64,000 nt of DNA from Ranitomeya imitator (GCF_032444005.1 NC_091287.1:46872001-46936000), one strand, 5' to 3'; shown: positions 11,544 to 63,749, numbered from the stretch's first letter. Notes: generated by a model from the letters alone, not told the origin. Program-made: numbers and translations.

Positions 11544-12287
11544 ATGTGCACAGACCAACTTAATACAAGTGGGTGCCATGCTGACTGCTTAGAAAGGCCA
11601 CTTTCTAGGGGATTTCGCAAACTGGGAAAACTAATAGCCAGGAACCCGTGGTTTTTCATCATTATCCCTGTTATTTTATCAGTTGGGTTAGGAGCTGGGT
11701 TTTATTTCCTGGAAGAAAGAGAATTTAACAAGTTACAAGAGCTCTTCATTCCAGAAGGAGGCATCGCAAAAGGCCAGAGAGATTTTATCAAGAAACATTT
11801 CCCCATGAATGAATCAGGTCAATTTTCAGCACAGCGGCTATATACGGCGAGCAGATTTGCTTCCCTCATTATTGTAACCACGTCAAAGAATATCCTCAAT
11901 AGAAGCAACTTCAAGGAGCTAGTGAAGTTGGACACAGCTGTGAAAAACCTGACCTCAAAGTCTTATCTAAGATTTAGACAACTATGTGCTGAAGTCAATG
12001 ATCACTCCTGTCTCCCAGCCAACCCATTACTCGCCTCAATGAGTAATAGTACAGAAGAAATCCTAATAACGTACCCAATGCTATTTAATGGGGAGTACGT
12101 CGGACTGTACATTGGAGGAGTGACCCTTGGTCCTGGCAACCAGTTACAGAAAGCCCAGGCTCTACGCTTTTTATATTACTTGAAGGATGATGATGAAAAA
12201 ATCCAAAATATCAGCCTGGAATGGCTTGAGTACTTCATGGAGGTTGTTCCTCATGAAATAGAAAAATTGCAGCTGAAATCATTGAAG
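11544..12287 (+). CDS. PTCHD3: Patched domain-containing protein 3-like, copy A, coding exon 1 (248 codons)
   Basis: MCTDQLNTSGCHADCLERPLSRGFRKLGKLIARNPWFFIIIP...: the CHxDC/TM1 start and ectodomain 1 of PTCHD3. Ends at AAG|GTAAGC donor (12287/12288), phase 0. The ORF-track tail after 12287 is intronic. Confidence 0.92.
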
Positions 12288-13021
12288 GTAAGCTATGATA
12301 TTGTTGTATTTTGTGGGCTTTTTTCGATTTGATTTAGAATATCTCTCAGTATTGTAAATCACCTTATGAATTAGGAATATAGTAGAAAGCATACGTCGTT
12401 TTTTTTGTTACCTGTAAGTATATGTTCAGGAAGTATGTAAAAAAAACCACATGATCATGAGAGAGAAGGATCTTAATTGCAAATTTTACCCTATTCTTAG
12501 CATATGATTTAATTATTGCTGGGACCCCTAGAGCCCCATCTGCAGAGCAGCCTCATCTTAAATAAAGCAAATCTATGACTGATTGACCTCCATTCCAATA
12601 AATTTCTATGGGCCGGCAAGAGAAAGCCTAGTATAGGTCTCTACTATTTCCGGTAGTCCCATTGTTATGGAGTGGAAGTTGAGCATTGTCACATGTACTT
12701 GATTCAAAACTTCATTCTCAGGATCTTGCGCCTCATTACTGGGATACATGGGCATCCCAGTGGTTGAACTCCCATTGAGCGGCCAGTTGTCTCTTATCAT
12801 ATGGATAGTAAATAACTTACAATTGTGGGAACACCACTATAAATTTAGATGCCCACACCTATTGTTCAAAGGGATGACACTCAGCTGGAGGTGCCTGGTA
12901 GCAGCTTTCTCCCTAATAAAAACATATGGCTACTTTCAATTGTATTTGGAAGTTGGGAAGAGATAGCTGTTGTGTGCATATATTGCAAATATGAAAACAA
13001 TATTTTTTGCATGACATACAG

Positions 13022-13143
13022 GTTTATCATTCAACATCTATGTCTCTACAAAAAGAGTTTGAAGAAAGCACAGAAAGCATCATCCCGTTGTTCTCAATCA
13101 CATATGTTGTGACAATGTTGTTCTCTATACTATCTTGCATAAG
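13022..13143 (+). CDS. PTCHD3: PTCHD3-like copy A, coding exon 2 (122 nt)
   Basis: Found by eye. TACAG|GTT acceptor; encodes VYHSTSMSLQKEFEESTESIIPLFSITYVVTMLFSILSCI; AG|GTAAGT donor, phase 2. Same length and phase as copy B exon 2. Confidence 0.88.
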
Positions 13144-13275
13144 GTAAGTGAATTCTGGAACTCATGCTGAAGCTGATGACATTTTAACTGTCACTGAAAT
13201 CATATTCTCAAGGGAAGAGCTTGCAATGCAAGGTCACCCATGGTGAATGTATATAAATTCTTATATATTTATATA

Positions 13276-15722: not shown

Positions 15723-15754
15723 AGACTCCAATAATTAGAATATTTTAGAATATA

Positions 15755-16315: not shown

Positions 16316-16461
16316 TTTTGACAACGTAAGAAATAAAATTTGGCTGACTACGATTGGAGTGATATCACCTGGATTAGCAATATTGGCAAGTTTTGGGTTG
16401 CTTTTACTGTGTGGGGTACCATTTGCCAGGACCGTTGCATATGCACCTTTTCTGATTCTTG
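16316..16461 (+). CDS. PTCHD3: PTCHD3-like copy A, coding exon 3 (146 nt, sterol-sensing domain TM3)
   Basis: TTTTAG| acceptor; encodes [49 protein letters not shown]; G|GTAAGA donor, phase 1. Confidence 0.9.
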
Positions 16462-18341: not shown

Positions 18342-20203
18342 GAGTCGGAGTGGACAATATGTTCATTATAATCTCATGTTGGCAGCAAACAAAGGTGACG
18401 AGTACACTTGAAGAACGCATGGCTGACACGTACCAAGAAGCAGCAGTTTCCATCACCATCACTACACTCACGGATGTACTCGCATTCTACATTGGTATTA
18501 TGAACCACTTTCCCTCCGTGCAGTCATTCTGCATTTACACAGGAACTGCCCTGGTGTTCTGCTATATCTACTGCATATCTTTCTTCGGAGCAATATTGGC
18601 TTTGAATGGGATGCATGAAACAAAAAACAGACATTGGTTAACGTGCATGAAAGTGAATAACAAAAATGATGATAAAAGGAGCCTTTGGTATAACGCTTGT
18701 TGTGTTGGGGGAGCGTATGACCCAACTCGGGAAACAGAAACTGAACATCCAATATCTGCATTTTTTTATAAGTACTACGGACCATTTCTTACAAAACCAT
18801 GGGTAAAAGTATCGGTGTTACTTTTGTATCTGTTATATTTATCTGCCAGCATTTATGGAAGCGTTCAGATACAAGATGGGATCGATATTCGAAATTTGGC
18901 CAACGTCAATTCTTCCTTGACCCAATTTTACGATGTAGAAGCTTTATACTTTTCTAAGTATGGTCCAAGGGTTATGGTGGTGGTAAGTAATGAAGCGGAT
19001 TACTGGGATATAAAAACAAAGGAGATCATTCAAGCTTGTATGCAAGAGTTAGAAAATAATCACTATATAGCCAAGGAATATACGGTGTCTTGGTTGAGAA
19101 CGTATGAAGATATTGCTAAGGTAGAAAATCTGAACATAACCAATAAGGAGAATTTCCTTAAACATTTAAATCAAGTGTATCTAAATTTTTCTCAATTTAG
19201 GCAAGACATCATCACTAATGGGTATGAGATTAAGACGTCCAGGTTCTTCATCCAGGCCATTAATATTGCCACCGTGGGTGATGGTAAAAATATGTTAACC
19301 CATTTACGAGATGTCACAGACAATTGTGACGTTGAAGTATTTGTCTATCACCCATTATTCATTTACTTGGACCAGTATCATATAATAATTCAAAACACAA
19401 TTCAAAATATTGTAGTCGCAACAGTGGTCATGTTGGTCATTTCAGTTCTGTTCATACCAGACCCCTTGTGCGCACTGTGGGTAACATTTGCCATTGCATC
19501 CATCATAGCTGGCGTGACAGGCTTCATGTTTTTCTGGAAAGTCAACTTAGATTCTGTATCGATGATTAATCTTGTCATCTGTATCGGGTTTTCGGTCGAC
19601 TTTTCAGCTCATATAGTATATGCGAGTGTTTCTAACAGGAAACCAAATGCTAACCAGAGAGTAATCGATGCTCTGCATGTCCTGGGTTACCCTATTGTAC
19701 AAGGGGCTTTGTCAACAATTTTAGGAATTGCTGCCCTTTCTGCAGCAAAAAGCTATATATTCCAAACTTTTTTTAAGATCATGCTCCTCGTCATCACATT
19801 TGGGGCACTTCATGGCTTGTTATTTATACCTGTGTTTTTGATGACAGTAGGAGCCTGTAGAAAATCAGGGCATGTCAAAGAGGAGCCTAAAAACGATGAA
19901 AATAAGAATAATAAAGTGTTACCACCTGCAGTTATTTACCGGGCTCACCCTTTAACAACTGATATCCAAATAAGAAAACCGGAGGCGAGTTTGCCAGGAT
20001 ATGCCATTTCAACATCCAATGTGATGGACTACAGTAGTCTTGACGGGAACTACTTCTGTATGAGTCGGCAGGGAAGTAACTACTCTGTACTTCATCCGGA
20101 TGTCCAAAAACAGGGAAATGAAAATGTAAGCGAACTCGTGGAACATAGAAGGAGAATGCTACAAGTTTACCTGGAACACAAAACTGATCAGAAATGCCAC
20201 TAA
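18342..20203 (+). CDS. PTCHD3: PTCHD3-like copy A, coding exon 4 (SSD TM4-6, ectodomain 2, TM8-12, long C-tail); spliced protein ~957 aa
   Basis: GCATAG|GA acceptor. Open frame GVGVDNMFIIISCWQQT...ITITTLTDVLAF...GFSVDFSAHI...FGALHGLLFIPVFL to TAA 20201-20203. Exon lengths 744+122+146+1862=2874 nt, divisible by 3. Confidence 0.93.
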
Positions 20204-21622: not shown

Positions 21623-21714
21623 TTAGTCTAGGATGTCCTAGGATCTCTTAAGAGACAACAAATGATAACAGCTTTCAACCAAGAAGTCAAACCTGTCAAA
21701 AACCTAAACATCAT

Positions 21715-44625: not shown

Positions 44626-44832
<207 letters not shown>

Positions 44833-45438: not shown

Positions 45439-45560
45439 CTAATACAGGACACAACTGCAAAAAATATGGTGACAAAATACGTAATAGAAAACAATGGGAT
45501 CACTGTTTTTGTTGTGCCGTCAAATTCTTGCTGACGTGATATTGCCGTGAAAAAAGATAC
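45439..45560 (-). CDS. PTCHD3: PTCHD3-like copy B, coding exon 2 (122 nt)
   Basis: Found by eye on the - strand. TTCCAG|GTA acceptor; encodes VSFFTAISRQQEFDGTTKTVIPLFSITYFVTIFFAVVSCI; AG|GTAAGA donor, phase 2. Confidence 0.9.
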
Positions 45561-47095: not shown

Positions 47096-48076
47096 TAAAA
47101 GTTAATAACAAAAAAAATGTGGATGATAACAATACAGCACAAATGAAATAATTAATGATAAAAAAACACATGGTATAGATTCTAATAGACAGCATATTTT
47201 ACCATATGTGTTAAAACATTAAGAGCTCATGCTGCTTGTATTGGATTTATGATTTATGAATCAATATGGCATCTATAGAGATCTTTGGGTTTATATTGGA
47301 TTTTTGTTTCTGATTTCATAATGAACGCTTTTCAAACAAACGTAAAGTGTTAGCCTCCTGAAAAATAAAACATTATAAACTGAAAATCGTAATATTTGTA
47401 AATGATTACCATAACCGGTAAATTACTTAACTCTCCGTAACCATATTCTCCCATTCCAGTCTATAATATATGGCCGTGATATTTCATGTTTTTAGCTAAA
47501 AGAGTATAGTCTTGAGTAATTGCTATCGGTGTGTGAATATATGGCTAGTGACTGAGATCTAATGTTTTTTCTTGGTATGAGAAGATGCCACTTTTCTCTT
47601 TCTCCAGAAATTCAGACCCCAAATTCAGACATAATACATGCAGCCTATATCCATTTTTTTTTTTACAAATTTTTTTTTAATTGCTATGTTAGGAAAATTA
47701 TTTTTCGGAGGGTTACTGTTTACTAAGTTCTAAAGAAATTGTGATTTTTGTGATATTTCCTCTATAAACATTGCTTCAAGAGGAAAATATGTAATAATAT
47801 ATATAGTGTCACATAATATGCCTATGGATCCATCAAACGAATTGGGTCTTTTTGCCACCATTTAGGGTGCACGCAGCTGTTCTAAAATTGATATTAAAGC
47901 TACATATGCTTCATAGTGTTCACTACTAAATACACATGGTTATATTACAGTTATATAGTAACTACTTATATTTCTGTATCATGAAATTACAATTGAACAA
48001 AAAAAAATGCTTATTAATGAATATTAAAGGAATTTTAGACTTAGCAACGTTTCAGAAATCATGATAAATTCCTTAC

Positions 48077-48820
48077 CTTTATTTCAGTGAGTTGAAGACT
48101 ATTCTTTGTGAAGAATTTGATAAATTCATTGATCCACCGCAGGCTTCTTTCTCTGTCGCTCTCGCTGTCTTCTCTCAGATAGTATATCAATTTGATTGCT
48201 TTGGCTTTTTGCACAACATCATCTGAATTTAGCGTCACTCCACCCAGGTATGTTCCCAGGAATATTTTACCTTGAAACATGGGGTAACTTATTGGTATTG
48301 TCGCTATCAGACTCACATTACCTTGTACCACAGAGAGGAGAGGATTAATCGTCATACATGTTTTTCCCTGGATCTCTGCACATAGTTGATGAAATGTGAG
48401 GCTTTCGTTAGCAGCGGGATCCATCACTGCGAAGTTCTGCACCATCTCATCCAGCTTCATAAGCTCTTCAAAGGTCTGAACGTTTATGACATTATCGGAT
48501 GTACTTACGGCTATGAGCGAAACAAACAAACCTTCTGTATATAGTCGCTGCGGAGAAAACTGCCCGGAGTCATCGGTGGGAAAATGTGTCTTTACAAATT
48601 CTCTCTCACTTTTAGCCGGGCCACCGATTGGGGTGAACTGTCCTTCGATGTCATTTGCTTGTCTTTGGGGTAAAAAGTAAAAGCCGGCTCCCAAGCCAGC
48701 AGATAAAGCAAATGGAATTAGTAGGAACCACCAGGGGTACCTTCCCACCAGCTTACCAAGCCAACTGAAGGCACGAGAGAGCGGTTTCTGTATACAGTCT
48801 GTGTGACACCTGGCCATCAT
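48077..48820 (-). CDS. PTCHD3: PTCHD3-like copy B, coding exon 1 (248 codons)
   Basis: MMARCHTDCIQKPLSRAFSWLGKLVGRYPWWFLLIP...LTEIK, then AAG|GTAAGG donor. The real ATG is at 48820 (the track starts at a TTG). 744 nt, identical in length to copy A exon 1. A splice acceptor (TTCTTCATTCTTTATAG|) lies 14 nt upstream of the ATG. Confidence 0.92.
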
Positions 48821-49399
48821 CAATCCCCTAATATCTATAAAGAATGAAGAACGAATATGTTTCTACTGTTAATAGTGATTATATAGCACACCTCAGCGAC
48901 GCCAGAAGCAGCAAATAATTGGATGACAAATGCTTTCTATTGCCAATAAAGATTTTCCACGGAAAAAGGAAGTTTTCCATATCTGGTTTACTTGGTAACT
49001 AATGCACAATTGACCTTTGCACGAGGAGATGTGTTTTTCGCACTATGACAGCTAAAAGTCCAGTCATTAGTATTAATACAAATAAAACAGAAGTGAATTA
49101 ACTGGAAAAGACTTGTCAATGCTACCTGCCAAATGAAATGCATGACATGATAAGGACAATGAACTAGGGGCTGTTTATAGAGCTCATATACTCACAGGGC
49201 AGGTTGTGCCTTCTCCACCCTCTTTTCATGCTGGGGACAGCGACTGAGCGAAAAAGACCCGGGACAGGTCAAAATTTCTCCCCAAATGGTTGCCTGTGTT
49301 TCCATATAATAGTATATTGAATCTGTACACCAATAAGATATATTCTTGTGAAGCATTTGAAAATCAGAGGGTGTGGTTGATTTTACTTTCCACTGACTG

Positions 49400-49760
49400 T
49401 TGGGATCAATCCCAGTCCACCTGGCACCCGTAACAAATGTTGAGTGCCCACCAACACGTTACTGTTTACGGAGCTCTACATGTTGCAACTAAAATCTTTT
49501 CAGCTAGGCACAAAAACTTTAGCTTACCACACCATGAGAAATAATATGGAGGTTTTGTCATACCCGGCAGGCAGCGTTCTTTCAGAACTTGTCTTCAGAG
49601 CTGGTGGTGGTGTCCTGATGGATAAGTGCTTCCGGCTGTCCCCTGAAAGTGTAGACCGCCTAACTTTCATAAAAATGAACAAGTCATGGATCTCCAATGA
49701 TTTTGCACCCCAGTCACGGATTGAGCAGACTAGACAATGGTGTAGTTTTTAGTGTCATGT
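49400..49760 (+). mobile_element. hAT transposase C-terminal dimerisation-domain relic
   Basis: EVLSYPAGSVLSELVFRAGGGVLMDKCFRLSPESVDRLTFIKMN matches the hATC motif (PAxSxxSERxFS...RxRLS). Confidence 0.8.
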
Positions 49761-49849
49761 ATTGATCTCGCGTTATTGCAGTCTGTGCCATCTTTGTGGT
49801 ATCTTTTGTGCCTGCTGTTGCTACTGATGCTGATTTTACACTTTTTTTT

Positions 49850-50430
49850 TTAAATATGGAGACTCTAATATGGGTCTCCACCTGATGGGTTTCCTGTAGT
49901 AGAAGGTGTATCAAAGGCTTATTATACTGTTTCAACTCTATGGAAATTGATGCCACTTTAGTGGTGTGTGACAATTATTTTTTGAAGTGTGGAGACTCCA
50001 AGTTGGGTCTCCATCAGTTGGCTTGCCTGTAGGGGAAGGTGTGTTAGAGTCCTATTATACTGTTTCTACTCTGTGGAAAATGATGCTACTTTATTGGTGG
50101 GTGATAATTTTTTGAAATGTGAAGACTACAAGGTGGGTCTCCATCTGTTGGGTTGCCTGTGGTGGAAGGTGTGTCAGAGGTTTATTACACTGTTTCTACT
50201 CTGTGTAAATTGATGCCACTTTACTGGTGATGACAATTATTTTTTTGAAATGTGGAGACTCCAAGTTGGGTCTCCATTTGCTGGGTTGCCTGTAGTGGAA
50301 GGTGTGTCAGAGTCCTATTATAGTGTTTCTACTCTGTGGAAATTGATGCCACTTTAGTGGTATGCGATAATAATACTTTGAAATGTGGAGACTACAAGTT
50401 GGGTCTCCATCTGGTAGGTTGCCTGTTCAT
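49850..50430 (+). repeat. ~131-nt tandem repeat (about 4.3 copies), probably hAT subterminal
   Basis: Units begin TGAAATGTGGAGACT at ~49852, 49982, 50113, 50246 and 50379. Each unit carries a GGAGAC-N10-GTCTCC hairpin. Confidence 0.85.
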
Positions 50431-50960
50431 GTAGAGTTCCCAGAAAGGCAGACCTGCACTCACTTTCAGTCAACTATCTGTGTTACTTTCCTTAAATTTT
50501 TGTACCACTAGTACTGTATGAAGCTGATGTTTGTGTTATCTCAATGTGGCTTGGCAAAAAAAGAAAAAAAAGGAGTTACATGAGGTATCATGGCTCCCAT
50601 ATAAGAATGCTGACACCGCTCCCTTAGCCACCACGTCTTAATTGAAACTTCAGTTCCTCATGCTGAATGCTGGCCCAGACAGTGATACAACATGTATGGC
50701 CTATTGTGGACTGCAGAAGGGCCATTACAAAATGTTCTACTGTGGGTCAATTGATCAGTCACCTACATGTGTTACTATCCTTACATTTTTCTACTAATAG
50801 TAGTCTATGAAATTGATGTTTGCGCCACTTGAGTGTGGCTGGGAAACTTTTTAGGTGTTGCATGAGGTATCAGGTCTCCCAACTAAGAAGGCTTAGACCA
50901 CTCCCTTAACCACCACATTTTAATTGAAACTTCAATTCAAAACTGTAAATGCTGTCCCAG

Positions 50961-52091
50961 ATCCTCTCCTCTCTGCAGTACAAGGTAATGTGAGTCTGAT
51001 AGCGACAATACCAATAAGTTACCCCATGTTTCAAGGTAAAATATTCGTGGGAACATACCTGGGTGGAGTGACGCTAAATTCAGATGATGTTGTGCAAAAA
51101 GCTAAAGCAATCAAATTGGTATACTATCTGAGAGAAGACAGCGACAGCGACAGAGAAAGAAGCCTGCGGTGGATCAATGAATTTATCAAATTCTTCACAA
51201 AGAATAGTCTTCAACTCACTGAAATAAAGGTAAGGAATTTATCATGATTTCTGAAACGTTGCTAAGTATAAAATCCCTTTAATATTCATTAATAAGCATA
51301 TTTTTTTGTTCAATTGTAATTTCATGATACAGAAATATAAGTAGTTACTATATAACTGTAATATAACCATGTGTATTTAGTAGTGAACACTATGAAGCAT
51401 ATGTAGCTTTAATATCAATTTTAGAACAGCTGCTTGCACCCTAAATGGTGGCAAAAAGACCCAATTTGTTTGATGGATCCATAGGCATATTATGTGACAC
51501 TATATATATTACATATGTATCTCTTGAAGCAATGTTTATAGAGGAAATATCACAAAAATCACAATTTCTTTAGAACTTAGTTAACCATAACCCACCGAAA
51601 AATAATTTTCCTAACATAGCAATTAAAAAAAATTTGTAAAAAAAAAATGGATATAGGCTGCATGTATTATGTCTGAATTTGGAGTCTGAATTTCTGGAGA
51701 AAGAGAAAAGTGGCATCTTCTCATACCAAGAAAAAACATTAGATCTCAGTCACTAGCCATATATTCACACACCGATAGCAATTACTCAAGACTATACTCT
51801 TTTAGCTAAAAACATGAAATATCACGGCCATATATTATAGACTGGAATGGGAGAATATGGTTACGGAGAGTTAAGTAATTTACCGGTTATGGTAATCATT
51901 TACAAATATTACGATTTTCAGTTTATAATGTTTTATTTTTCAGGAGGCTAACATTTTACGTTTGTTTGAAAAGCGTTCATTATGAAATCAGAAACAAAAA
52001 TCCAATATAAACCCAAAGATCTCTATAGATGCCATATTGATTCATAAATCATAAATCCAATACAAGCAGCATGAGCTCTTAATGTTTTAAC
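50961..52091 (+). pseudogene. Inverted partial duplicate of PTCHD3-B (3' part of exon 1 plus first ~860 nt of intron 1)
   Basis: Reverse complement of 47210-48345, roughly 98% identical by eye. Encodes PLLSAVQGNVSLIATIPISYPMFQGK...LTEIK with an intact GTAAGG donor at 51229/51230. No start of exon 1, and I found no matching exons 2-4 downstream. Confidence 0.9.
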
Positions 52092-52154
52092 GAGATGTGA
52101 TGACTTGTCACAAACTCTGCAATGGACCCCCTTCTTCACTGACGCTTGTAAGTA

Positions 52155-53830
52155 GAGATGAGTGAACCTTTCAAGGTTCGATTTGGTTCAATTTGCTGAA
52201 CGATTAGACGTCCGCCGAACAATGGGAGGCCAAACTAAACGTATACACAACACCTTAAGGGGTGACAAAAAGATTCCTAAACAGCTAAAATTAGGAGCAG
52301 ACACAATGAAAAGTGGAATCAATTGACCAAAGTAAAAATTTGTAAATGGCACACCAGCAGTCAGCCATGGGCCATGCATGAGGTATCAGGGCCTGGCCTA
52401 GCATTTGCAGCTTGGAATTGAAGTTTCAATGAGGACCTGCTGGTTAAAGGAGCATTGTAAGCCTTCTTGATTTTGTTTTTCTTTTTTTATTCCAGCCACA
52501 CTCAGATGGCACAAACATCAATTTCATACTGGAGTACTGGTACAAAAATGTAAGGAAAGTAACACATGTTGTTGACTGATCAATTGACCCACAGTAGAAC
52601 CTTTTATGATGGCATAGAAGCAGACAGCCATTTTGTTGCTATCTAAGCCTGTAAAAACATTTTTTTAAAATGTATTGGTATGATATTGCCCATCCATACA
52701 GTTCTTGCGTAAATTTCCTTGGTATATAACCCTGAAAAAACTTCTTAAAAAATTGATCAGTATAATACATTGGTCATCCATAGACTTTCACACATTCCTG
52801 GGTAGATTCCGTTGCTATATAAGCCTAAAAAACTTGTTTAAAATTTTACCAGTATTAAATTGCTCATCCGTAGTCTTTTACATATTCTTTGGTAGATTTC
52901 GGTGATATATATACCCCCAAAAAACTTGTTAAAAAATTGAACGGTATAATACATTGCTCATCCATACACTTTTACATATTCTTGGGTAGATTTCGCTGTT
53001 ATATTAGCCTCAAAAAACTTGTTCCAAATTTTTGGCTGTGTGCGCACGTTGCAGATTTGGTGTATTTTTTACACGTTTTTTTTTCTGCATGGATTTGTGA
53101 CAAAACCTGATGCCAGCAAAGGAATGGGAAACCTGAATTGTCATGCACATGTTGAGCATGTTTGACTTGCAGATTTGGTGCAGAAAATAATCTGCAGCAT
53201 GTCAATTCTCTGTGCATTTTCCCCCTGCGTTTTTCACCATTGACTTCACTCAAATCAATCAAAAACGTTGGGTGAAAATGTGCAAAAACGCACCAAAATC
53301 GCACGTTTTTGCAGCTGCATTTTTTCTGCCAAGCAAGGCAGAAATGGTGCAGAAATTTTACTCAACATGTGCACATACCCTTGGGGAGACTCCCTTAGGG
53401 TATGTGCACACGTTGAGTAAAATTTTTTCACTATTTCTGTATCTCTTGGCAGGAGAAATGCAGCTGCTAAAATGTGTTTTTGGTGTGTTTTTTGCCTGCG
53501 TTTTTGATTGATTTGAGTGAAGTCAGTGGTGAAAAATGCAGGGCAAATGTGCACAGAGAATTGACATACGGAAGATTATTTTCTGCACCAATTCTGCTAG
53601 TCAAAAATACTCAAAGTGTGCATGGCACTTTACTGGCTTTAGGTTTTGCTTTAGGTTTTATCACAAAAAAAAATGACAAAAATGCACAAAATCTGCAACA
53701 TGTGCACATAGCCTAACCCTCAAAAAGCTTGTTTAAAAATGAATCGGTATTATATTGCTTACTCATAGACTAGTCCGTGATCTGGAATACATTTCCTTGG
53801 TATATAACCCTGAAAAGGGCCTAGCCTTTA
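52155..53830 (+). mobile_element. hAT-family left end with ~88-nt tandem repeats (52670-53020), interrupted by a MITE pair
   Basis: TAGAGATGAGTGAAC TIR-like start. 52400-52620 is the reverse complement of 50730-50860. Repeated unit ATAATACATTGCTCATCCATA...GGTAGATTTCG. Confidence 0.55.
53034..53713. mobile_element. Two Harbinger-type MITEs in inverted (head-to-head) arrangement, 53034-53380 and 53398-53713
   Basis: ...GTGCACATACCC, 17-nt spacer, GGGTATGTGCAC...; the arms are reverse complements at roughly 80% identity. Confidence 0.75.
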
Positions 53831-54875
53831 TGAGTCTAGGAGTACCAATACATGGCAATTTGAACAGAATGTGTATGAGGCCCTCCTTTATGTCTAATAC
53901 AGGGTGTATCTGAGTTCAGAATCAATCAATTTTGATGACTGCAAATTCTTCATAAGTTTCTGGGTAGTAATAACATGTATATTTCTATAAGTGTATTAAG
54001 TGGGAGTGTCCTGAGCAGAGTTTTCGTAGAATAAAATAATATAAATAGTTTTGTAAATTGATAAACTTCTGATCGGAATGTTGATGCATTCATATTGACA
54101 TTCGAAATAAAGAGGGTAACATTCTCTCTCTTAGGGCAGATTGTTTTATGCACTATTAAGGTACCTATATAGCCTTTCTATTTTCGCAAATATTTTTATT
54201 CTGATTTTTCTAATATCAATCAAAGAAATAACAAATAAATAAAATAACAGAATATAACAGAAGGACAGGGATATAGAAAAAAGAAGATAAGGGAGGGGAA
54301 GAGACAATGGGATTAAGGAATTAACAAAGCAATGGAAAACAAAGAAAGATTCCAATAAAAGTCCTTCCCTTTATCCTCTCTCATTTTATTTTTTTTTAAA
54401 CTGAACTTCTGGCATTTTGGACTGATGTTGCTTTTATTTTTAGAGGTCAAAAACCCCTTCAGTGGTTAAGAAATATAACTTAAAATGGTTTTAATACAAA
54501 TCCAATCTTAGTTATTTACTCCTGAAATATGAAGACATACTGTAACATTGCTCGTAGTCACCCCATCTTGGTGCCTTTATCTCTTCTAAATGTTTTTTTT
54601 TCAACAATGACTCATTCTAACATTTAGCATTGATGTATCTTTTTATTATTTTTATTATTTAGGTTCACGTTAAGCTATAACTAGAGGTTAATAATTTTAT
54701 CTTGAAAACGTGCCTCCTAATGCTATCATAGTTTGTGCGTCATCTTGGAACAACTACATCTATTACCACAATAACAATATCTAAGTATGAAGTATTGATA
54801 TTTTTTTTTACTTTTTTTTTTAAATAACTGTGATTAAATTCTGTGTATAGTGCTGTAGAATAAGTTAGTTCTATA

Positions 54876-56509
<1,634 letters not shown>

Positions 56510-56658
56510 TATATGAAATAAGGCAATGTGTTTTTACAGGTGAAGCCTTATTCCCACTCCCAATGTCTTGTCCTACTTTTCAGCAGTTAGGCTCGTACTG
56601 TATCTTGCTGCAACTGATTTCCTGAAAGACGAGTGCATGACACATTTGAGAAGTGTAA

Positions 56659-56870
56659 GGCTATGTGCACATATTGCGGATTCTCTGCAGATCCGCAGCG
56701 TTTTTTTGCAGTGCAGAATCGCTGCAGATCCACAATTGATTTACAGTACAATGTAAATCAATGAGAAAAAAAAACAGCTGTGCAAACTTTGCGGAAAATC
56801 CACTGCGGAAGCGCTGCGGATTAAAAGAAGTAGCATGTCACTTCTTTTTTTGTGAATCTGCAGCGTAAAG
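56659..56870. mobile_element. Truncated copy of the 46767-47095 MITE
   Basis: TAA|GGCTATGTGCACA start and matching interior; the right end is missing. Confidence 0.7.
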
Positions 56871-58043
56871 CATATGGTTAAGCACTCTCTTTGGCTGATT
56901 GTAAAAAAGGTAAGAAACAATATGTAACGAATCCTTTGGATAAAATGAAAACATTATGTACACCAAGTAAAAGAAGGATTAGTGTAGATGAAAATGCACT
57001 AATATTTAATGAAGCATGTCAAAAGGTTATGAAACAACTGACAGTGGTGAAAAAACTAAATTAATGTCCGGGAATCTGTTAATAGCCCAACAAGGAACGA
57101 AAAAAACAAAATTAAGGTCCAGGAGTCTGTTAATAACCCAACAAGGAAGTAAAAATCACTAAGCAAAACAACAACTGCAAATTCATTGACGAAGCAAAGA
57201 CAGTTTGACTCATGCCTACTTGTCTCTTTCCATCTCTAGATTAAGTCATATAAAGCTATCTCTCGGCAATTTAAAATGTTTATCACAGCCAATCCTTCTT
57301 CTAAGGAAACCCAAGTTATCAAAAATAAGGATGGGCTGGGGGATTGCAAGTACAAAATGAGGGAATCCCATCAGTTTCCCATCACTCAATATCCCAGGCA
57401 TGTAAGTATTCAGAGTACTGTTTTTTTTGCTGTTGAAGCCTCTTTTACATAGGATTGTACCATGATAGAATTCAGTTTTGTTGTGATTGGATAATTTGAT
57501 TTGGAAATTTCTGTGCACGTAATAATAAAAGTGAACTGCCAATTAACACAACCTTTTTGTTTAGCTTTAGCAAAGTCGATATTTACTGGAAAGTAAGGTA
57601 ATCTATTTTTTTTATTGTTTTAGAATTTTAACAATAGGAAATTGCATAACATTTTAAATCTGTTTTTTTTTCCTTAGATAAAGATATTTTCTTATTGTAT
57701 AAAGTTTTTCTCGTGCTACTCAGCGCATACCCGATCACCCTCGGCAAAATCGAATAACAAGCACTTGCGCTCATCACTACTAATAATTCCTGGCATACTT
57801 TTTTCAATAGGATGTCGATCTTGATAGCGATAATATAAGATAAGCTCTTAAAGTCACTCTAGTGGCAGCTTAAACTATTTTTTAATCTTTAAAATAACTA
57901 TACGTTTGATCTTATTTTTGTAGATGAAGTTGCTCTGCTTATTGCAAGTAGATTAGTGGGGGTCTGGGTCCTGTGACTCACACCAAGTGCTCAAAAATGC
58001 CCAAAATGGCAGCTTAAAAGACAGGAACGCACAGAGCAGGTTA

Positions 58044-58520
58044 GGCTATGTTCACATTTGCGTTGTTTGGCGCAGCGTCATCGACGCAACGCACAACGCA
58101 TGTCAAATGCATACACAACGCAGTGTTTTTTTACGCATGCGTTGTCCTATACAATTGAAGATCCAAAACGCCCAAAAAAATACATTTAGTCAAAAGGCGC
58201 ATGCATCAAAAAACGCGGCTGAACACAGGCACCTGCGCCCTATGCGTTTTTCATAGACACTAATGTGTTTTTTGGCGCATTTATGACGCGGGTGCGTTGC
58301 ATGTGTTTTTCTTCGGAAATGTGACGCATCAAAACTGCAACCTGTAGCATCGTCCGCGTCCTATCTGGTGCGCCAAAGAAAATGCATGCGTCATATAACG
58401 CATGACAATGCATACCGGCGCATGTCCATGCGCCCCCCATGTTAAAGATAGGGGCGCATGACGCATGCGTCGGTATGCGTCAACGACACTGCGCCCCACG
58501 GCGCAAATGTGAACGTAGCC
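58044..58520. mobile_element. Harbinger-type MITE
   Basis: TIR GGCTATGTTCACATTTGCG/CGCAAATGTGAACGTAGCC, flanks TTA/TAA. Confidence 0.8.
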
Positions 58521-58673
58521 TAAATGTGATAAAAAGTGGACATTCACTTAAAGTGTTGTACAAATACGCCTTAGTTCATGAATGTCCTTATATCCAAGGA
58601 TAATTTAAATTGCTAAAAAAAATCTTAGAAACATACCTTTTGAAAGTGGGAATTAGAAAGATGTAAACTGTTA

Positions 58674-59065
58674 GGCTATGTGCATACGTTCAGGATTTCT
58701 TTCAGAAATTTCCTGAGAAAAACCTGAAATTTTCTGCAAGAAATCTGCATGCGTTTTATGCGCGTTTTTTGCGCGTTTTTACCGCTTTTTTGGTTTGTTT
58801 TTGGTGCATTTCTTTGCGGATTTTTCCGGACATTTCCCAATGCATTCTATAGTGAGAAATCCGCAAAAAAATCCGCAAAATTAATGAACATGCTGCGTTT
58901 TTTACTGCGATGTGTTTTTTTCACGGGAAAAAACGCATCATGTGCACAAAAATTGCGGAATTCATTCTAAATGATGGGATGCTTAATGTATGCTTTTTTT
59001 TGTGGCTTTATAGCGTTTTTATCGCGAAAAAAAACGCGAAAAATCTGCAACGTGTGCACACAGTC
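58674..59065. mobile_element. Harbinger-type MITE just upstream of the first PKS coding exon
   Basis: GGCTATGTGCATACG/CGTGTGCACACAGTC, TSD TTA/TTA. Confidence 0.75.
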
Positions 59066-59253
59066 TTAATATGACAGCAGAACTTATTTTTTTAAGCAAA
59101 AATGAAAAGCAGCATTTATCAACTTAAATACAACAAAAAACTAACAGAATTAATCATTCAGCAAGATGTTAGATATAGTAATTGCTTTTTTATCATAAGA
59201 AGAAAGTATGCTAATCTTCTGCCTATGTTTTTCTTCAGAACTAGAGGATCAGG

Positions 59254-59311
59254 ATGGAGGAGGGAGAAGATCACATAGCAGTTGTTGGCATAGGATGCAA
59301 TTTCCCTGGAG
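59254..59311 (+). CDS. Type I polyketide synthase (animal PKS), first coding exon: MEEGEDHIAVVGIGCNFPG
   Basis: Strong Kozak context (AGGATGG). IAVVGIGCNFPG is the canonical first beta-strand motif of type I KS domains. GGAG|GTGAGT donor, phase 1. Upstream acceptor TTTTTCTTCAG| at 59238 with a CTAAT branch site at 59211-59215. Confidence 0.88.
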
Positions 59312-59346
59312 GTGAGTGAGTGTTATAAACCATGATTCCCAATTAA

Positions 59347-60106
59347 AAGGGGTATTCTTAAAATATCATTGATGGCATAGTTGGTGTCATATACAAATTG
59401 AACCAATTTTTTACAAGCCTACACTACTTCCAGCTTTACAACCCATGGCACTATTCAGCCTATGGAACTAAGTGTCAGTGCAGCGAGTGCATCACTAGAC
59501 CGTGCCTGCGGTGGGGAGTAATATTTTTAAGCACAGATCAGTACTTGGGAAAAACTATGGAGGTCCTCATACCACGAGGATGGGACATCATACTTGTTTG
59601 GGAAATATCATAGTGTTTGGGGGGCTGTGGGATCATCATTCTGTATGGAGGATATTTTTTCCCATCAATCGAACTGTATACGGGGGAGCTGCAGGGCTGT
59701 GTCTGGCCAGACAGGAGCATGGTCTGATCATATCACAGCTCCTGACCAAGGAAGGAAGCAAAGGATGGTATACAGACAGGACAGCTTGGAATTGCAGATG
59801 CTGCTTTCTGTGAGGTAAAACATTTCCCTGCCTGTTTTTAAAAACGATTTACCTCACAAAAAGCAGCATTTGTGATCCCATGCATTAATGTCTGTATCTC
59901 CTCTTTTTGTCTCCCCTCCTGCCCAGGAGCTGTGGTATGATCAGGCCATGTTCCTGTCCGATAGGACACAGCCATTGCACAGTACACAGCAGGGGCACAT
60001 TTCTAAGATTATCTCAGCACAGGAACATTTTCACATCCAATTGTGGAAATTATTTTTATTCCAAGATCTATTGATTAAGATATACTTTGTACATGGGAAA
60101 GCCCCT
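59347..60106. mobile_element. Kolobok/T2-type fold-back MITE in the PKS intron
   Basis: TTAA-AAGGGG...CCCCT-TTAG ends; internal inverted arms 59700-59815 and 59846-59960. Confidence 0.6.
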
Positions 60107-60120
60107 TTAGCTATGCTTAA

Positions 60121-60315
60121 CCCCTTCATGACCTTGGGATTTTTCGTTTTTCCGTGCTCGTTTTTCGCTCCCCTCCTTCCCAGAGCCATAACTTTTTTAT
60201 TTTTCTGTTAATATGGCCATGTGAGGGCTTATTTTTTGCGGGACGAGTTGTACTTTTGAACGACATCATTGGTTTTAGCCTGTCGTGTACTATCCCGTCC
60301 AAGGTCAGAAAGGGG
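60121..60315. mobile_element. Internally deleted piggyBac-type MITE
   Basis: TTAA|CCCCTT...AAGGGG|TTAA. Confidence 0.85.
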
Positions 60316-60488
60316 TTAATATTAAGTGATAAAATAATAGTAAAAATATAATAATAATAATAATAATTATTAAGTTTGGCCTGTTGGTTTTGCCCTCTAT
60401 AACAGTCACAGTCTCTCGTGTAACTCCTTGTGAAAATTAATTGTTGTCCTCACTTGCATTCTTTACAAGTAGGGAAAGTGAACTATAA

Positions 60489-62934
60489 GGCCGGCGTCAC
60501 ACTTGCGAGTTTTACGGACGTAAGAGTGCAGAAACTACGTCCGTAAAACTCACAAAAAATACGGCACAATTATTCTCTATGCCCCTGCTCCTATCTGCCG
60601 TATTAAACTGATCCGTATTATACGGCTTTCTATGGCCGTAGAAAATTGCAGCATGCTGCGTCTGTCACCGTATTGCGCAAATAAAACGTCAATGAAAGTC
60701 AATGGAAGCCCCAAAATTACGGATTACACACGGACCAGCAGTGTGACTTGCGAGGAATACGCAGTGCTGTTAGAGAGAAAAGCCGGTAATTCAATTACCG
60801 GCTTTTGCTTTCTCCTTCCTAAACCCGACATGATATGAGACCTGGTTTACATACAGTAAACCATCTCATATCACCATTTTTTTTGCATATTCCACACTAC
60901 TAATGTCAGTAGTGTGTATATGTAAAATTTGGCTGTTCTAGCTAGTAAAATAAGGGGTTAAATGGCGGAAAAAATTGGCGTGGGCTCCTGCACAATTTTC
61001 TCCGCCAGAGTAGTAAAGCCAGTGACTGAGGGCAGATATTAATAGCCTGGAGAGGGTCCATGGTTATTGGCCCCCCCCCCCTGGCTAAAAACATCTGCCC
61101 CCAGCCACCCCAGAACAGGCACATCTGGAAGATGTGCCTATTCTGGCACTTGGCCACTCTCTTCCCATTCCCGTGTAGCGGTGGGATATGGGGTAATGAA
61201 GGGTTAATGTCACCTTGCTATTGTAAGGTGACATTAAGCCTAATTAATAATGGAGAGGCGTCAATTATGACACCTATCCATTATTAATCCAATACTAGTA
61301 AAGGGTTAAAAAAAAACACACACATTATTAAAAAATAATTTATTGAAAAAATCACAAAGGCTGTTGTATTAATTTATTCTACTCTCAATCCACTCACTGA
61401 AGACCCTCGATCTGTAAATTAAAAAAGAAAAATAAACCAACAATATACATACCTTCCGAGGATCTGTAAGGTCCAACGATGTAGATCCATCTGAAGGGGT
61501 TAAAATATTTTGCAGACACGAGCTCTGCTAATGCAGGCTGCTCATGTCTGCAATACCCCGGCGAATGAAGCTAAATATAGGTCAATGACCTATATTTAGC
61601 TTCATTTGCGGTGAGGTGCCCTCTGCTGGCTGTTCCTAGATCGTGGGAACTTACCTAGAAAGCTCCCTTGCTCGAGTTCATATGAGGACAACCAGCAGAG
61701 GGCGCCCTCTTATGATCTCGAGCAAGGGAGCTTTCTAGGAAAGTTCCCACGATCTAGGAACAGCCAGCAGAGGGCGCCTCACCGCAAATGAAGCTAAATA
61801 TAGGTCATTGACCTATATTTAGCTTCATTCGCCGGGGTATTGCAGACATGAGCAGCTACATTAGCAAAGCTCGTTTCTGCAAAATATTTTAACCCCTTCA
61901 GATGGATCTACATCGTTGGACCTTACAGATCCTCGGAAGGTAATTATATTGTTGGTTAATTATTTTTTTTTTAATTTACAGAGCGAGGGACTTCAGTGAG
62001 TGGATTGAGAGTAGAATAAATTAATACAACAGCCTTTGTGATTTTTTCAATAAATTATTTTTTAATAATGTGTGTGTGTTTTTTTTAACCCTTTACTAGT
62101 ATTGGATTAATAATGGATAGGTGTCATAATTGACGCCTCTCCATTATTAATCTGGCTTAATGTCACCTTACAATAGCAACGTGGCATTAACCCTTCATTA
62201 CCCCATATCCCACCGCTACACGGGAATGGGAAGAGAGTGGCCAAGTGCCAGAATAGGCGCATCTTCCAGATGTGCCTGTTCTGGGGTGGCTGGGGGCAGG
62301 TGTTTTTAGCCAGGGGGGGGCCAATAACCATGGACCCTCTCCAGGCTATTAATATCTGCCCTCAGTCACTGGCTTTACTACTCTGGCGGAGAAATTTGTG
62401 CGGGAGCCCACGCCAATTTTTTCCGCCATTTAACCCCTTATTCTACTAGCTAGAACGGCCAAATTTTGCATATACACACTATTAACATTAGTAGTGTGGA
62501 ATATGCAAAAAAAAAAAGGTGATACGAGATGGTTTACTGTATGTAAACCAGGTCTCATATCATGTCGGGTTTAGGAAGGAGAAAGCAAAAGCCGGTAATT
62601 GAATTACCGGCTTTCTGCTATCTCGCGCTGTATTAAGTAATAATATATATACATATATGTGTCTCCCTGACATATATATATATAGAGACATTATATATGT
62701 TTGTTTTTTTTTAACACATGGATCCCTTGTATGTCCGTATGTCGTTTTGCAAGCCTGCGATAAAAACACGCATTACGGCTGCCATACGGATTACATACGG
62801 AGGATGCCATGCGCAAAAAACGGTAACACACCCTGCCTATGGAGGAGCTACGGACCACTATTTTCGGGACTTTTCAGCGTATTACGGCCGTAATATATGG
62901 ACCGTATTTTCATACGCTGTGTGTGACGCCGGCC
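60489..62934. mobile_element. 2.45-kb Harbinger-type non-autonomous element, largely one giant palindrome, in the PKS intron
   Basis: TIR GGCCGGCGTCACAC/GTGTGACGCCGGCC, TSD TAA/TAA; ~60775-61677 is mirrored by ~61716-62620. Confidence 0.9.
61616..61777. promoter_or_regulatory. Three CTCF-like motifs at the centre of the palindromic element
   Basis: CCAGCAGAGGGCAC on the - strand (61616-61629); CCAGCAGAGGGCGC on the + strand (61692-61705 and 61764-61777). Motif match only. Confidence 0.5.
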
Positions 62935-63595
62935 TAAGTGTATTTGTGCAAGTGAGAATTTTAACAAAATGTTGTATTTTTGCATTGCTGCATTGAGTGT
63001 TAACTTTTTTTCACTTGTTGTATAAATTATTACAAAAGCATGTTATTTATGCTCGATAGCAAAAGTTTGTTGTTTTTTCATAATGTTAATATTAAGATTT
63101 AAAGTGGCCTCCCATGTTAGTTTTATCTTTCAGGTCTGTGTAGTTAAAGTGATGCCAAATATATACAGCTTTTTATATGTTTTACTACTTTTTCACAATA
63201 GTACACTAAATAGAAAAAAGTAGTTTTTTTCTATGGTATGGCTCCATACTCCAAGAGTCATAACTGGATTTACTTTTATGTCGAAAACGGTATGTGAGAT
63301 TTTTTTGGTGCAATAAATTCTATATTTAATACAAATAATTTTGGGTTACATACAAATTATTGATTGACTTTTTATTACTTTATTCTAAGGAATATAAATA
63401 TTTTCTAAGCATAACTTAAAAAATATATAATAAAAGGAAAATAAAATTAGAAAGCAGAAGTTTCTTCTTTCCTTTTCTTTTAAGTTTATTTTATCTTATA
63501 ATTATCGACTATTGTGTGATAAAATTATTTTGAAACAATTCTCGTTTATAAAAAATATTTTTTTTTAAATATTTTTTAAAATGCTCATTTACTAG

Positions 63596-63749
63596 GTGAA
63601 GGAGTTGACAATTTTTGGAAAGTTATTTTTCATGGGAAAAATTGTGCAACAGAGATACCAGAAGAAAGATTTCCTCTGAAAAAATGGTATGATGCCGATC
63701 AAACCAAACCAGGCAAAATATATACCAGTCGAGCAGCTTTTGTAAATGG
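63596..63749 (+). CDS. Type I polyketide synthase, second coding exon: (G)EGVDNFWKVIFHGKNCATEIPEERFPLKKWYDADQTKPGKIYTSRAAFVN(G)
   Basis: TTTACTAG| acceptor; its phase-1 start joins the 59254-59311 exon in frame (G|GT=Gly); GG|GTAAGT donor. The FW..G...EIP.ER....WYD.D..KPGK.YT pattern is typical of PKS ketosynthase N-termini. The gene continues beyond the window. Confidence 0.9.

What the first reader, a model, noticed from the sequence alone, without database searches (positions are those of the whole stretch)
11544..63749. Polyketide synthase clustered with duplicated Patched-related (SSD/RND) transporters: candidate vertebrate synthesis-and-export locus
Seen in sequence: two exons absent from the ORF track (59254-59311 and 63596-63749) splice in frame to MEEGEDHIAVVGIGCNFPGGEGVDNFWKVIFHGKNCATEIPEERFPLKKWYDADQTKPGKIYTSRAAFVNG, a type I ketosynthase N-terminus. 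Two intact PTCHD3-like genes lie directly upstream. Established: vertebrate non-FAS PKSs exist (budgerigar MuPKS makes yellow psittacofulvin polyenes; medaka OlPKS/zebrafish pks1 are needed for otolith formation), but most of their products and exporters are unknown. PTCHD/Patched/NPC1/Dispatched belong to the RND superfamily and move lipids. In mycobacteria, RND MmpL transporters are encoded beside the PKSs whose products they export (e.g. ppsA-E with mmpL7). Inference: this may be an analogous PKS-plus-transporter module, with the transporter duplicated and diverged, perhaps for a skin pigment, lipid or biomineralisation product. From memory the avian PKS lies in the PTCHD3/RAB18 neighbourhood, so the linkage may be ancient; this needs checking.
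Basis: partly seen in the sequence, partly recalled or inferred. Interest (0 to 1): 0.92.

Follow-up and report, generated by a model that had tools for sequence, protein, structure and literature searches.

The report
Frog polyketide synthase beside PTCHD3 transporter genes
The window holds two intact PTCHD3 membrane-transporter genes and the start of an expressed polyketide synthase gene in a poison frog; this neighbourhood is at least as old as jawed vertebrates and already published, but whether the transporter exports the synthase's product is untested.

Summary
Exons 59254-59311 and 63596-63749 have GT/AG borders, join in frame and encode a ketosynthase N-terminus (Pfam E 1e-15). Transcript contigs from three related species carry exactly this splice, one inside a 6.9 kb contig.

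Two intact four-exon PTCHD3 genes lie upstream: A (957 aa, + strand) and B (881 aa, - strand, head-to-head with the PKS, 10.4 kb apart). Copy A is 100% identical to a Ranitomeya imitator protein. A and B come from a duplication in the frog stem lineage, not a recent one.

The ancient linkage holds. I found PKS next to PTCHD3 in elephant shark, gar, tarpon and anole. However, it is already published: Yue 2022 calls PTCHD3 the neighbour of almost all animal PKS homologues, and Feiner 2024 describes a wall-lizard cluster of five Pks and five Ptchd3.

The synthesis-and-export idea is not shown. Circumstantial support:
- Both PTCHD3 copies keep the acidic transport motifs.
- The medaka PKS product is lipophilic and secreted by an unknown route.
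- Zebrafish ptchd3a and pks1 are both expressed in the otic primordium.
- Mouse and human PTCHD3 are dispensable, and placental mammals have no PKS.

Verdict: a new member of a known gene neighbourhood, carrying an attractive, testable but unproven hypothesis. The catalytic exons lie beyond the window.

The parts
11544..12287 (+). PTCHD3-A coding exon 1
   Evidence: ATG ORF ending at a GTAAGC donor; tblastn to frog PTCHD3 proteins
13022..13143 (+). PTCHD3-A exon 2 (122 nt)
   Evidence: AG/GT borders; same length as exon 2 of copy B
16316..16461 (+). PTCHD3-A exon 3 (146 nt)
   Evidence: AG/GT borders; same length as exon 3 of copy B
18342..20203 (+). PTCHD3-A exon 4. It holds the sterol-sensing domain, TM4 motif GVGVDN, TM10 motif GFSVDF and a long C-terminal tail. 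The full product is 957 aa.
   Evidence: Pfam Patched E 5e-28 and Sterol-sensing E 6e-27. 100% identical to the R. imitator protein P0303, also 957 aa. Motifs.
42325..43958 (-). PTCHD3-B exon 4, with the sterol-sensing domain, TM4 motif GVGVDD and TM10 motif GFSVDF
   Evidence: Pfam Sterol-sensing E 2e-32 and Patched E 1e-30; 92-94% identical to Ranitomeya and Dendrobates PTCHD3; motifs
44658..44803 (-). PTCHD3-B exon 3
45439..45560 (-). PTCHD3-B exon 2
48077..48820 (-). PTCHD3-B coding exon 1 (ATG at 48820), preceded by an acceptor-like ttctttatag. The full product is 881 aa.
   Evidence: 95.5% identical to the second R. imitator B copy, P0002.
47210..48345 (.). Left arm of a 1.13 kb inverted repeat. 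It covers the 3' part of PTCHD3-B exon 1 plus the start of intron 1.
   Evidence: the repeat finder pairs I1, I2 and I4, 92-99% complementary
50961..52091 (.). Right arm of the inverted repeat. It holds an inverted partial copy of PTCHD3-B exon 1 (aa 150-249).
48821..59253 (.). 10.4 kb divergent intergenic region between PTCHD3-B and the PKS. It holds the repeat arm and a Tc1-type transposase ORF (55482-56123).
59254..59311 (+). PKS first coding exon, with an acceptor-like tttcttcag just upstream at about 59238
63596..63749 (+). PKS second coding exon (KS N-terminal domain). The gene continues beyond the end of the window.

Best explanation
This is the Ranitomeya imitator (mimic poison frog) segment of an old, already described animal gene neighbourhood in which a non-FAS iterative type I polyketide synthase sits beside PTCHD3 genes. 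In vertebrates the neighbourhood lies in the RAB18 ... YME1L1/ACBD5 block.

The window holds three things: PTCHD3-A, a fast-evolving frog-wide paralogue with a long C-tail; one of two PTCHD3-B copies; and, head-to-head with B, the first two coding exons of the PKS. All three are real, intact as far as the window reaches, and the PKS splice is used in transcripts of related frogs.

How the parts work is inferred from their families. The PKS is a cytosolic KS-AT-DH-KR-ACP megasynthase that builds a lipophilic polyketide. The PTCHD3 proteins are multi-pass transmembrane sterol-sensing-domain proteins of the RND superfamily. They keep the intramembrane acidic residues used for cation-driven lipid transport.

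The adjacency is inherited from at least the jawed-vertebrate ancestor. Why it persists is not settled. I put about 0.3 on true biochemical coupling, with PTCHD3 moving the PKS product. The rest is split between shared regulation and passive synteny.
For: Exons, frame and splice sites. KS domain.

Splice joint in contigs of three related organisms, one exon-2-bearing contig of 6939 nt, and zero depth in unique intron sequence.

Vertebrate PKS N-termini are 63-69% identical with the same exon 1/2 boundary in shark, gar, tarpon, loach, quail and Eleutherodactylus coqui.

No animal FAS appears among the 60 PDB matches shown (of 68 at E up to 10); the best are bacterial and fungal PKSs.

Gene models for A and B. 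A is identical to the R. imitator protein.

Tree: A and B are sister frog-wide clades, with stem lengths 0.27 and 0.097.

Adjacency seen directly:
- elephant shark: PKS 2111 aa, head-to-head, 3.8 kb apart
- gar: PKS 2115 aa, head-to-head, 9.3 kb apart, YME1L1 on the other side
- tarpon: two PTCHD3 genes then PKS 2103 aa
- anole: two PTCHD3 genes then PKS 2088 aa, convergent
- Xenopus laevis: a 206 aa Ras-family GTPase gene, read as RAB18, head-to-head with A-type PTCHD3

Literature: PMC9894158, PMC10990284, PMC12330192.
Against: Only 70 residues of the PKS are in the window. The catalytic Cys and His residues, AT, DH, KR and ACP could not be checked for this gene.

The transcript evidence comes from relatives (word share 0.25-0.42), not from this species.

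Copy B has no 100% match in the protein collection although copy A does. The public annotation may therefore treat B differently.

The near-perfect inverted repeat around the 5' end of B could be an assembly artefact.
Confidence: 0.85

Rival explanations
1. Synthesis-and-export module. PTCHD3, especially the head-to-head B copy, moves the lipophilic PKS product across or out of the membrane. The two genes stay linked because they work together.
For: Adjacency survives inversions and tandem duplications in shark, gar, tarpon, anole and frog. It is also reported in a sea star and for 'almost all' animal PKS homologues.

Wall lizards have five full-length Pks and five full-length Ptchd3.

Both frog copies keep the TM4 and TM10 acidic motifs.

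Medaka OlPKS sits at the apical membrane, and its ethyl-acetate-extractable product is secreted into the endolymph by an unidentified route.

Zebrafish ptchd3a is expressed throughout the otic-epibranchial domain, and pks1 throughout the otic vesicle.

Mouse and human PTCHD3 are non-essential, and no placental mammal has a PKS.

The same runs, X1-X4 and X6, hold both PKS exon 2 and PTCHD3-B exon 4, while other runs of the same species labels hold next to none of either.

No Xenopus B-type PTCHD3 turned up in three searches, and Xenopus is reported to lack pks.
Against: There is no transport, binding or genetic interaction data. Placental mammals retain PTCHD3, expressed in sperm, without a PKS. 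Orientation is not conserved: head-to-head, tandem and convergent all occur.

No PTCHD3 lies within 10 kb upstream of the PKS in quail, within 10 kb either side in the loach, or within 18 kb upstream in E. coqui.

The Xenopus co-loss rests on annotated proteomes and a 2015 BLAST statement. The run-sharing evidence has coded tissues and few sampled words.
Confidence: 0.3
2. Regulatory linkage only. The genes share enhancers or a chromatin domain and so are co-expressed and hard to separate, but PTCHD3 does not handle the polyketide.
For: Head-to-head arrangement in shark, gar and frog (and this window). Both first coding exons are preceded by acceptor-like sequences, so untranslated first exons and promoters may lie closer together in the intergenic region. 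Fish otic co-expression. From general knowledge, not tested here: conserved ancient gene pairs in animals are often explained by cis-regulatory constraint.
Against: The orientation changes in tarpon and anole argue against a simple shared bidirectional promoter. In this frog the 10.4 kb intergenic region is filled with a transposon and a duplicated gene fragment.
Confidence: 0.25
3. Passive synteny. The pair is just part of a slowly rearranging vertebrate block (RAB18, PTCHD3, PKS, YME1L1, ACBD5), with no selection on the adjacency itself.
For: Flanking genes of the block are also conserved: YME1L1 beside PTCHD3 in gar and wall lizard, and the gene read as RAB18 beside PTCHD3 in Xenopus. The human block keeps PTCHD3 between RAB18 and ACBD5 (my own knowledge). 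Placental mammals lost the PKS without losing PTCHD3.
Against: Adjacency is reported outside vertebrates, in a sea star and in Yue 2022. Copy numbers match in the wall lizard. The two families stay interleaved despite repeated local duplication.
Confidence: 0.3
4. The two KS exons are a relic, with the rest of the PKS broken or missing in this frog, or they belong to fatty acid synthase.
For: Only 70 residues are visible. A 2015 paper states that frogs lost pks.
Against: Spliced transcripts exist in three related species, one in a 6.9 kb contig. The E. coqui orthologue is followed by a 1920 aa multidomain PKS. No animal FAS appears among the PDB matches shown. Synteny and exon structure match the vertebrate PKS, not FASN.
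Confidence: 0.05

Closest known systems
Pks/Ptchd3 multicopy cluster between Rab18 and Acbd5 in the common wall lizard (Feiner et al. 2024, PMC10990284)
   Same: The same two gene families lie side by side in the same chromosomal block, with tandem duplication of PTCHD3.
   Different: The lizard has five full-length copies of each family and extensive structural variation. The frog window shows two PTCHD3 genes (a third is elsewhere on the chromosome) and one PKS start. The paper treats the two families separately and proposes no functional link.
Animal PKS homologues flanked by PTCHD3 (Yue et al. 2022, PMC9894158, Fig. 4D)
   Same: It states that PTCHD3 is the neighbour of almost all homologues of this animal PKS clade.
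   Different: There the adjacency is used only as evidence that the PKS is of animal origin. No frog was discussed in the passages I read, and no transport idea was raised.
Medaka OlPKS / zebrafish pks1 (otolith nucleation) and budgerigar MuPKS (psittacofulvin)
   Same: They belong to the same vertebrate non-FAS PKS family, judged from N-terminal similarity to fish and bird fragments (63-65%) and a shared exon 1/2 boundary.
   Different: The product and tissue in the frog are unknown. Catalytic domains are not visible in the window.
Mycobacterial PpsA-E / Mas with MmpL7 (PKS plus RND exporter)
   Same: A PKS is encoded beside an RND-superfamily membrane protein. The Pfam MMPL model gives a weak hit on the PTCHD3 sterol-sensing domain (E 3e-9 for copy B).
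   Different: The frog genes are separate eukaryotic genes, not an operon. PTCHD3 belongs to the Patched branch, not MmpL. No PKS-transporter contact or export dependence is known. This is an analogy only.
Mammalian PTCHD3 (human 10p12.1; mouse)
   Same: It is the orthologue family of the frog genes, in the same RAB18-side neighbourhood.
   Different: Placental mammals have one copy, expressed in male germ cells and non-essential, and no PKS next to it. Frogs have A and B paralogues.

Membership tests
Animal non-FAS type I iterative PKS (vertebrate PKS / pks1 / MuPKS family) | Ketosynthase N-terminal domain | tested here: met
   PF00109 positions 2-65, E 1.1e-15, 58 bits against a cut-off of 20.8
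Animal non-FAS type I iterative PKS (vertebrate PKS / pks1 / MuPKS family) | Orthology to vertebrate PKS N-termini with the same exon structure and genomic neighbourhood | tested here: met
   63-69% identity to bird, loach and E. coqui fragments. The exon 1/2 boundary is shared in six other species. PTCHD3 is the neighbour in shark, gar, tarpon and anole.
Animal non-FAS type I iterative PKS (vertebrate PKS / pks1 / MuPKS family) | Distinct from animal fatty acid synthase | tested here: met
   No animal FAS chain appears among the 60 PDB matches shown (of 68 at E up to 10); the best matches are bacterial trans-AT and cis-AT PKSs. This rests on 70 residues; no full KS tree was possible.
Animal non-FAS type I iterative PKS (vertebrate PKS / pks1 / MuPKS family) | KS catalytic Cys-His-His and the AT, DH, KR and ACP domains | not testable with these tools
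   These exons lie beyond position 64000. Orthologues in gar, shark, tarpon, anole and E. coqui carry KS, KS_C, AT, PS-DH and KR/adh_short.
Animal non-FAS type I iterative PKS (vertebrate PKS / pks1 / MuPKS family) | Transcribed and spliced | tested here: met
   The GT..AG joint 59311/63596 is in contigs of X2, X3 and X4, and X4 has a 6939 nt contig. These are related species, not this one.
PTCHD3 (Patched-family sterol-sensing-domain proteins, RND superfamily) | Patched and Sterol-sensing Pfam domains | tested here: met
   Copy A: Patched E 5e-28, Sterol-sensing E 6e-27. Copy B: E 1e-30 and E 2e-32.
PTCHD3 (Patched-family sterol-sensing-domain proteins, RND superfamily) | Orthology to annotated PTCHD3 proteins | tested here: met
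   Copy A is 100% identical to the R. imitator PTCHD3-like protein. Copy B is 95.5% identical to R. imitator PTCHD3. Both nest inside frog PTCHD3 clades.
PTCHD3 (Patched-family sterol-sensing-domain proteins, RND superfamily) | Intramembrane acidic motifs GxxxD(D/N) in TM4 and GxxxD in TM10 | tested here: met
   B has GVGVDD, A has GVGVDN, and both have GFSVDF. That these residues are needed for transport is from my knowledge of PTCH1, DISP1 and NPC1, not tested here.
PTCHD3 (Patched-family sterol-sensing-domain proteins, RND superfamily) | Twelve transmembrane helices in two six-helix halves | tested here: inconclusive
   A crude hydropathy scan gives 13-15 peaks clustered in two halves. No structure was predicted.
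Bacterial PKS plus MmpL exporter module (Pps/Mas with MmpL7) | Transporter belongs to the MmpL family | tested here: not met
   The MMPL Pfam hit is secondary (E 8e-6 for A, 3e-9 for B) to far stronger Patched and Sterol-sensing hits.
Bacterial PKS plus MmpL exporter module (Pps/Mas with MmpL7) | PKS and transporter genes are adjacent | tested here: met
   This window,
Bacterial PKS plus MmpL exporter module (Pps/Mas with MmpL7) | Export of the polyketide depends on the transporter, or the transporter contacts the synthase | not testable with these tools
   No experiment is available, and I ran no complex prediction because I make no binding claim.

The most novel reading that the evidence does not exclude
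PTCHD3, an orphan Patched-family protein, is the dedicated membrane transporter for the lipophilic products of the animal PKS. The PKS-PTCHD3 pair would then be an ancient animal 'biosynthetic gene cluster' of a synthase plus its exporter. That would explain three things: how the otolith-nucleating polyketide reaches the endolymph; why the two families duplicate together; and why PTCHD3 became dispensable in placental mammals, which lost the PKS.
Probability: 0.3. Interest if true: 0.85.

Novelty: new member of a known kind. Interest (0 to 1): 0.5.

Why it matters
Vertebrate PKSs are poorly understood. One bird product is known, and one fish product is known only by its activity. PTCHD3 has no known function. 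If the two are partners, each orphan explains the other, and animals would have a true synthase-plus-transporter gene cluster.

The idea is directly testable in zebrafish, where pks1 loss gives a clear no-otolith phenotype and ptchd3a is expressed in the same primordium.

On its own, the frog locus adds smaller points. Neobatrachian frogs keep an expressed PKS, contrary to a published statement that frogs lost it. Frogs also carry two old PTCHD3 paralogues, only one of which sits head-to-head with the PKS.

Tried and rejected
Full-length PKS. A phmmer search with exon 2 against the representative library returned mostly giant bacterial PKSs whose several KS domains sum their scores. Only short vertebrate fragments surfaced, so no full-length frog PKS id was obtained. 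The length window of the search for homologous proteins stopped me reaching 2100 aa proteins from a 70 aa query. I did not read through stops to get round it.

Ranitomeya context. The look-up of P0002 returned no DNA and no neighbour within 10 kb.

Taxa where adjacency was not seen within the flanks:
- wall lizard copy P0096, which has only YME1L1 beside it
- quail and loach
- E. coqui, where 18 kb upstream of KS exon 1 is empty of PTCHD3
- Hymenochirus and X. laevis, with no PKS within 10 kb of their PTCHD3 gene
The X. tropicalis protein was not on record.

Expression in this species. No run holds more than 42% of the sampled words, so all read evidence is from relatives. Tissues are coded, so co-expression could only be inferred from which runs hold both genes.

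Other searches. Other window ORFs of 90 aa or more gave only reverse-transcriptase or transposase hits, or nothing. The supplement of the zebrafish otic RNA-seq paper held no pks1 entry. Earlier-scan notes by the word 'polyketide' returned nothing.

Rejected readings. FASN. Recent duplication of A and B.

Full report
WHAT IS THERE

The two short exons exist as described. Exon 1 starts at the ATG at 59254 and ends at 59311 before GTGAGT. Exon 2 (63596-63749) follows TTTACTAG and ends before GTAAGT. Joined in frame, they give the 70-residue peptide quoted in the finding. That peptide matches the N-terminal part of Pfam ketoacyl-synt (PF00109, positions 2-65, E 1.1e-15). tblastn with bird, fish and frog PKS fragments finds only these two exons in the window, so the rest of the gene lies beyond position 64000.

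The splice is used. Assembled contigs from public runs of three related organisms (X2, X3, X4) skip exactly 59311 to 63596 with GT..AG ends. A fourth run (X1) has a more diverged joint. Unique intron bins have zero depth, so these runs behave as RNA. In X4, exon 2 lies 70-230 nt from one end of a 6939 nt contig, which is the size expected for a full PKS mRNA of about 2100 codons. No run of this species itself was available; the best word share was 0.42.

THE PKS IS NOT FATTY ACID SYNTHASE

- Against all PDB chains, the peptide's best matches are bacterial and fungal PKS ketosynthases (E down to 1e-11 for a single KS). No animal FAS appears among the 60 matches shown, of 68 at E up to 10.
- In the large protein library, the best single-domain matches are vertebrate PKS fragments: E. 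coqui 69%, a bird cluster 64% whose members are named PpsD-like polyketide synthase, and a loach 63%.
- The boundary between coding exons 1 and 2 is the same in elephant shark, gar, tarpon, loach, quail and E. coqui.

THE TWO PTCHD3 GENES

Both genes have four exons, with identical lengths for exons 2 and 3 (122 and 146 nt) and no internal stop.
- A, + strand: 11544-12287, 13022-13143, 16316-16461, 18342-20203. Product 957 aa.
- B, - strand: 48820-48077, 45560-45439, 44803-44658, 43958-42325. Product 881 aa.

Both carry the Patched and Sterol-sensing domains, with a secondary weak MMPL hit. A and B are 56% identical to each other. Both keep the acidic intramembrane motifs typical of Patched, NPC1 and Dispatched transporters: GVGVDD in B, GVGVDN in A, and GFSVDF in both.

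My model of A is 100% identical over its full length to a Ranitomeya imitator protein of the same length, which identifies the genome. B is 95.5% identical to another R. imitator PTCHD3 on the same chromosome, so the species has at least three copies.

A maximum-likelihood tree of 69 proteins puts A-type and B-type in two sister clades. Each contains frogs from Ascaphus and Bombina upward, and salamanders, caecilians, amniotes and fishes lie outside. The duplication therefore dates to the frog stem lineage. The A stem is about three times longer than the B stem (0.27 against 0.097), meaning A diverged faster. The two B copies of each poison-frog species pair with each other, which suggests gene conversion or repeated duplication.

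LAYOUT

A and B are tail-to-tail. B and the PKS are head-to-head, with start codons 10.4 kb apart. Both first coding exons are preceded by acceptor-like sequences, so untranslated first exons probably lie in the intergenic region (agrees with note s1-295398). Reverse-transcriptase ORFs sit upstream of A and between A and B. A Tc1 transposase ORF and one arm of the inverted repeat around B's 5' end sit between B and the PKS.

IS THE LINKAGE ANCIENT?

Yes. Looking up PTCHD3 proteins in their own assemblies showed the following.
- Elephant shark: a 2111 aa PKS head-to-head, 3.8 kb away.
- Spotted gar: a 2115 aa PKS head-to-head, 9.3 kb away, with YME1L1 on the other side.
- Tarpon: two PTCHD3 genes, then a 2103 aa PKS in tandem 7.5 kb downstream.
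- Anole: two PTCHD3 genes, then a 2088 aa PKS, convergent.
- Xenopus laevis: the A-type gene is head-to-head with a 206 aa Ras-family GTPase gene, which I read as RAB18. This places A on the RAB18 side of the block.

Adjacency is therefore at least as old as jawed vertebrates, while orientation is not fixed.

THE LINKAGE IS NOT NEW

- Yue et al. [quoted passage not shown]
- Feiner et al. 2024 describe multiple Pks and Ptchd3 copies, five full-length each, between Rab18 and Acbd5 in wall lizards. They note the same region in budgerigar and redpoll.
- A crown-of-thorns seastar selective-sweep window lists PKS1 and PTCHD3 together.
- In the passages I read, none of these proposes that the two proteins work together. 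Only three papers in the library mention both names.

DOES THE EXPORT IDEA HOLD?

Nothing here tests transport. Circumstantial points in favour:
- The adjacency survives inversions and duplications, and is reported outside vertebrates.
- Copy numbers match in the wall lizard.
- The transport motifs are intact in both frog copies.
- Hojo et al. 2015 showed that medaka OlPKS sits at the apical membrane of the otic epithelium. Its ethyl-acetate-extractable product is secreted into the endolymph and acts outside the producing cell. No secretion route is identified.
- Zebrafish ptchd3a has widespread expression in the otic-epibranchial progenitor domain, and pks1 is expressed throughout the otic vesicle.
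- Mouse and human PTCHD3 are non-essential, and no placental mammal has a PKS.
- The runs that hold the PKS exon (X1-X4, X6) are also the best holders of PTCHD3-B exon 4. Other runs of the same species labels hold next to none of either.
- No Xenopus B-type PTCHD3 appeared in three searches, including one seeded with the pipid B-type protein. Xenopus is reported to lack pks.

Points against:
- Placental mammals keep PTCHD3 without a PKS.
- Orientation varies between lineages.
- In several species no partner lay within the 10 kb that I could see.
- The Xenopus co-loss rests on annotation and on an old BLAST statement.
- The run evidence has unknown tissues and few sampled words.

I put about 0.3 on true biochemical coupling. 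The remainder is divided between shared regulation and passive synteny.

ONE CORRECTION TO THE LITERATURE

Hojo et al. 2015 wrote that pks genes were lost in frogs and mammals. R. imitator, its relatives with spliced transcripts, and E. coqui (a 1920 aa PKS) show that neobatrachian frogs keep the gene. Lin et al. 2024 found PKSs in marsupials but in no placental mammal.

VERDICT

The locus is a new, frog member of a known gene neighbourhood. The synthesis-and-export reading is unproven, but it is specific, apparently unpublished, and cheaply testable in zebrafish.

Noticed in passing
window 47210-48345 and 50961-52091: A 1.13 kb inverted repeat, 92-99% complementary, with 2.6 kb between the arms. 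The loop holds the 5' part of PTCHD3-B exon 1 and its upstream region. The right arm carries an inverted partial copy of exon 1 (aa 150-249). It is either a very recent inverted duplication or an assembly fold-back.
   Followed up: partly
L004 10001-45067 (Eleutherodactylus coqui): The first two PKS coding exons (18489-18551 and 21691-21840) are annotated as a separate 186 aa protein named after LINC00614. The 1920 aa PKS model starts only at 35592, so the gene model looks split.
   Followed up: partly
literature, PMC4604110: The paper states that pks genes were lost in frogs. The window, the spliced transcripts of related poison frogs and the E. coqui gene show that this does not hold for neobatrachian frogs.
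   Followed up: yes
L010: Only A-type PTCHD3 proteins were found for Xenopus tropicalis and X. laevis. The pipid Hymenochirus has a B-type gene. Xenopus may have lost B-type PTCHD3 together with the PKS.
   Followed up: partly
window 42325-48820 (-): PTCHD3-B has no 100% match in the protein collection, although PTCHD3-A of the same window does. This B copy may be unannotated or modelled differently in the public annotation.
   Followed up: no
tree: The two B-type copies of each poison-frog species (Phyllobates, Anomaloglossus, Dendrobates tinctorius, R. variabilis, R. imitator) group by species. This suggests gene conversion between tandem copies, or repeated independent duplication.
   Followed up: no
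window 59225-59253 and 48821-48845: Both the PKS and the PTCHD3-B first coding exons are preceded by a pyrimidine tract plus AG. One X3 contig carries 25 further letters upstream of PKS exon 1. Untranslated first exons therefore probably lie in the shared intergenic region.
   Followed up: partly
window 6217-9452, 22086-24071, 40116-41399, 55482-56123: Reverse-transcriptase ORFs (LINE-like remnants) lie upstream of A and between A and B. A Tc1-type transposase ORF lies between B and the PKS.
   Followed up: partly
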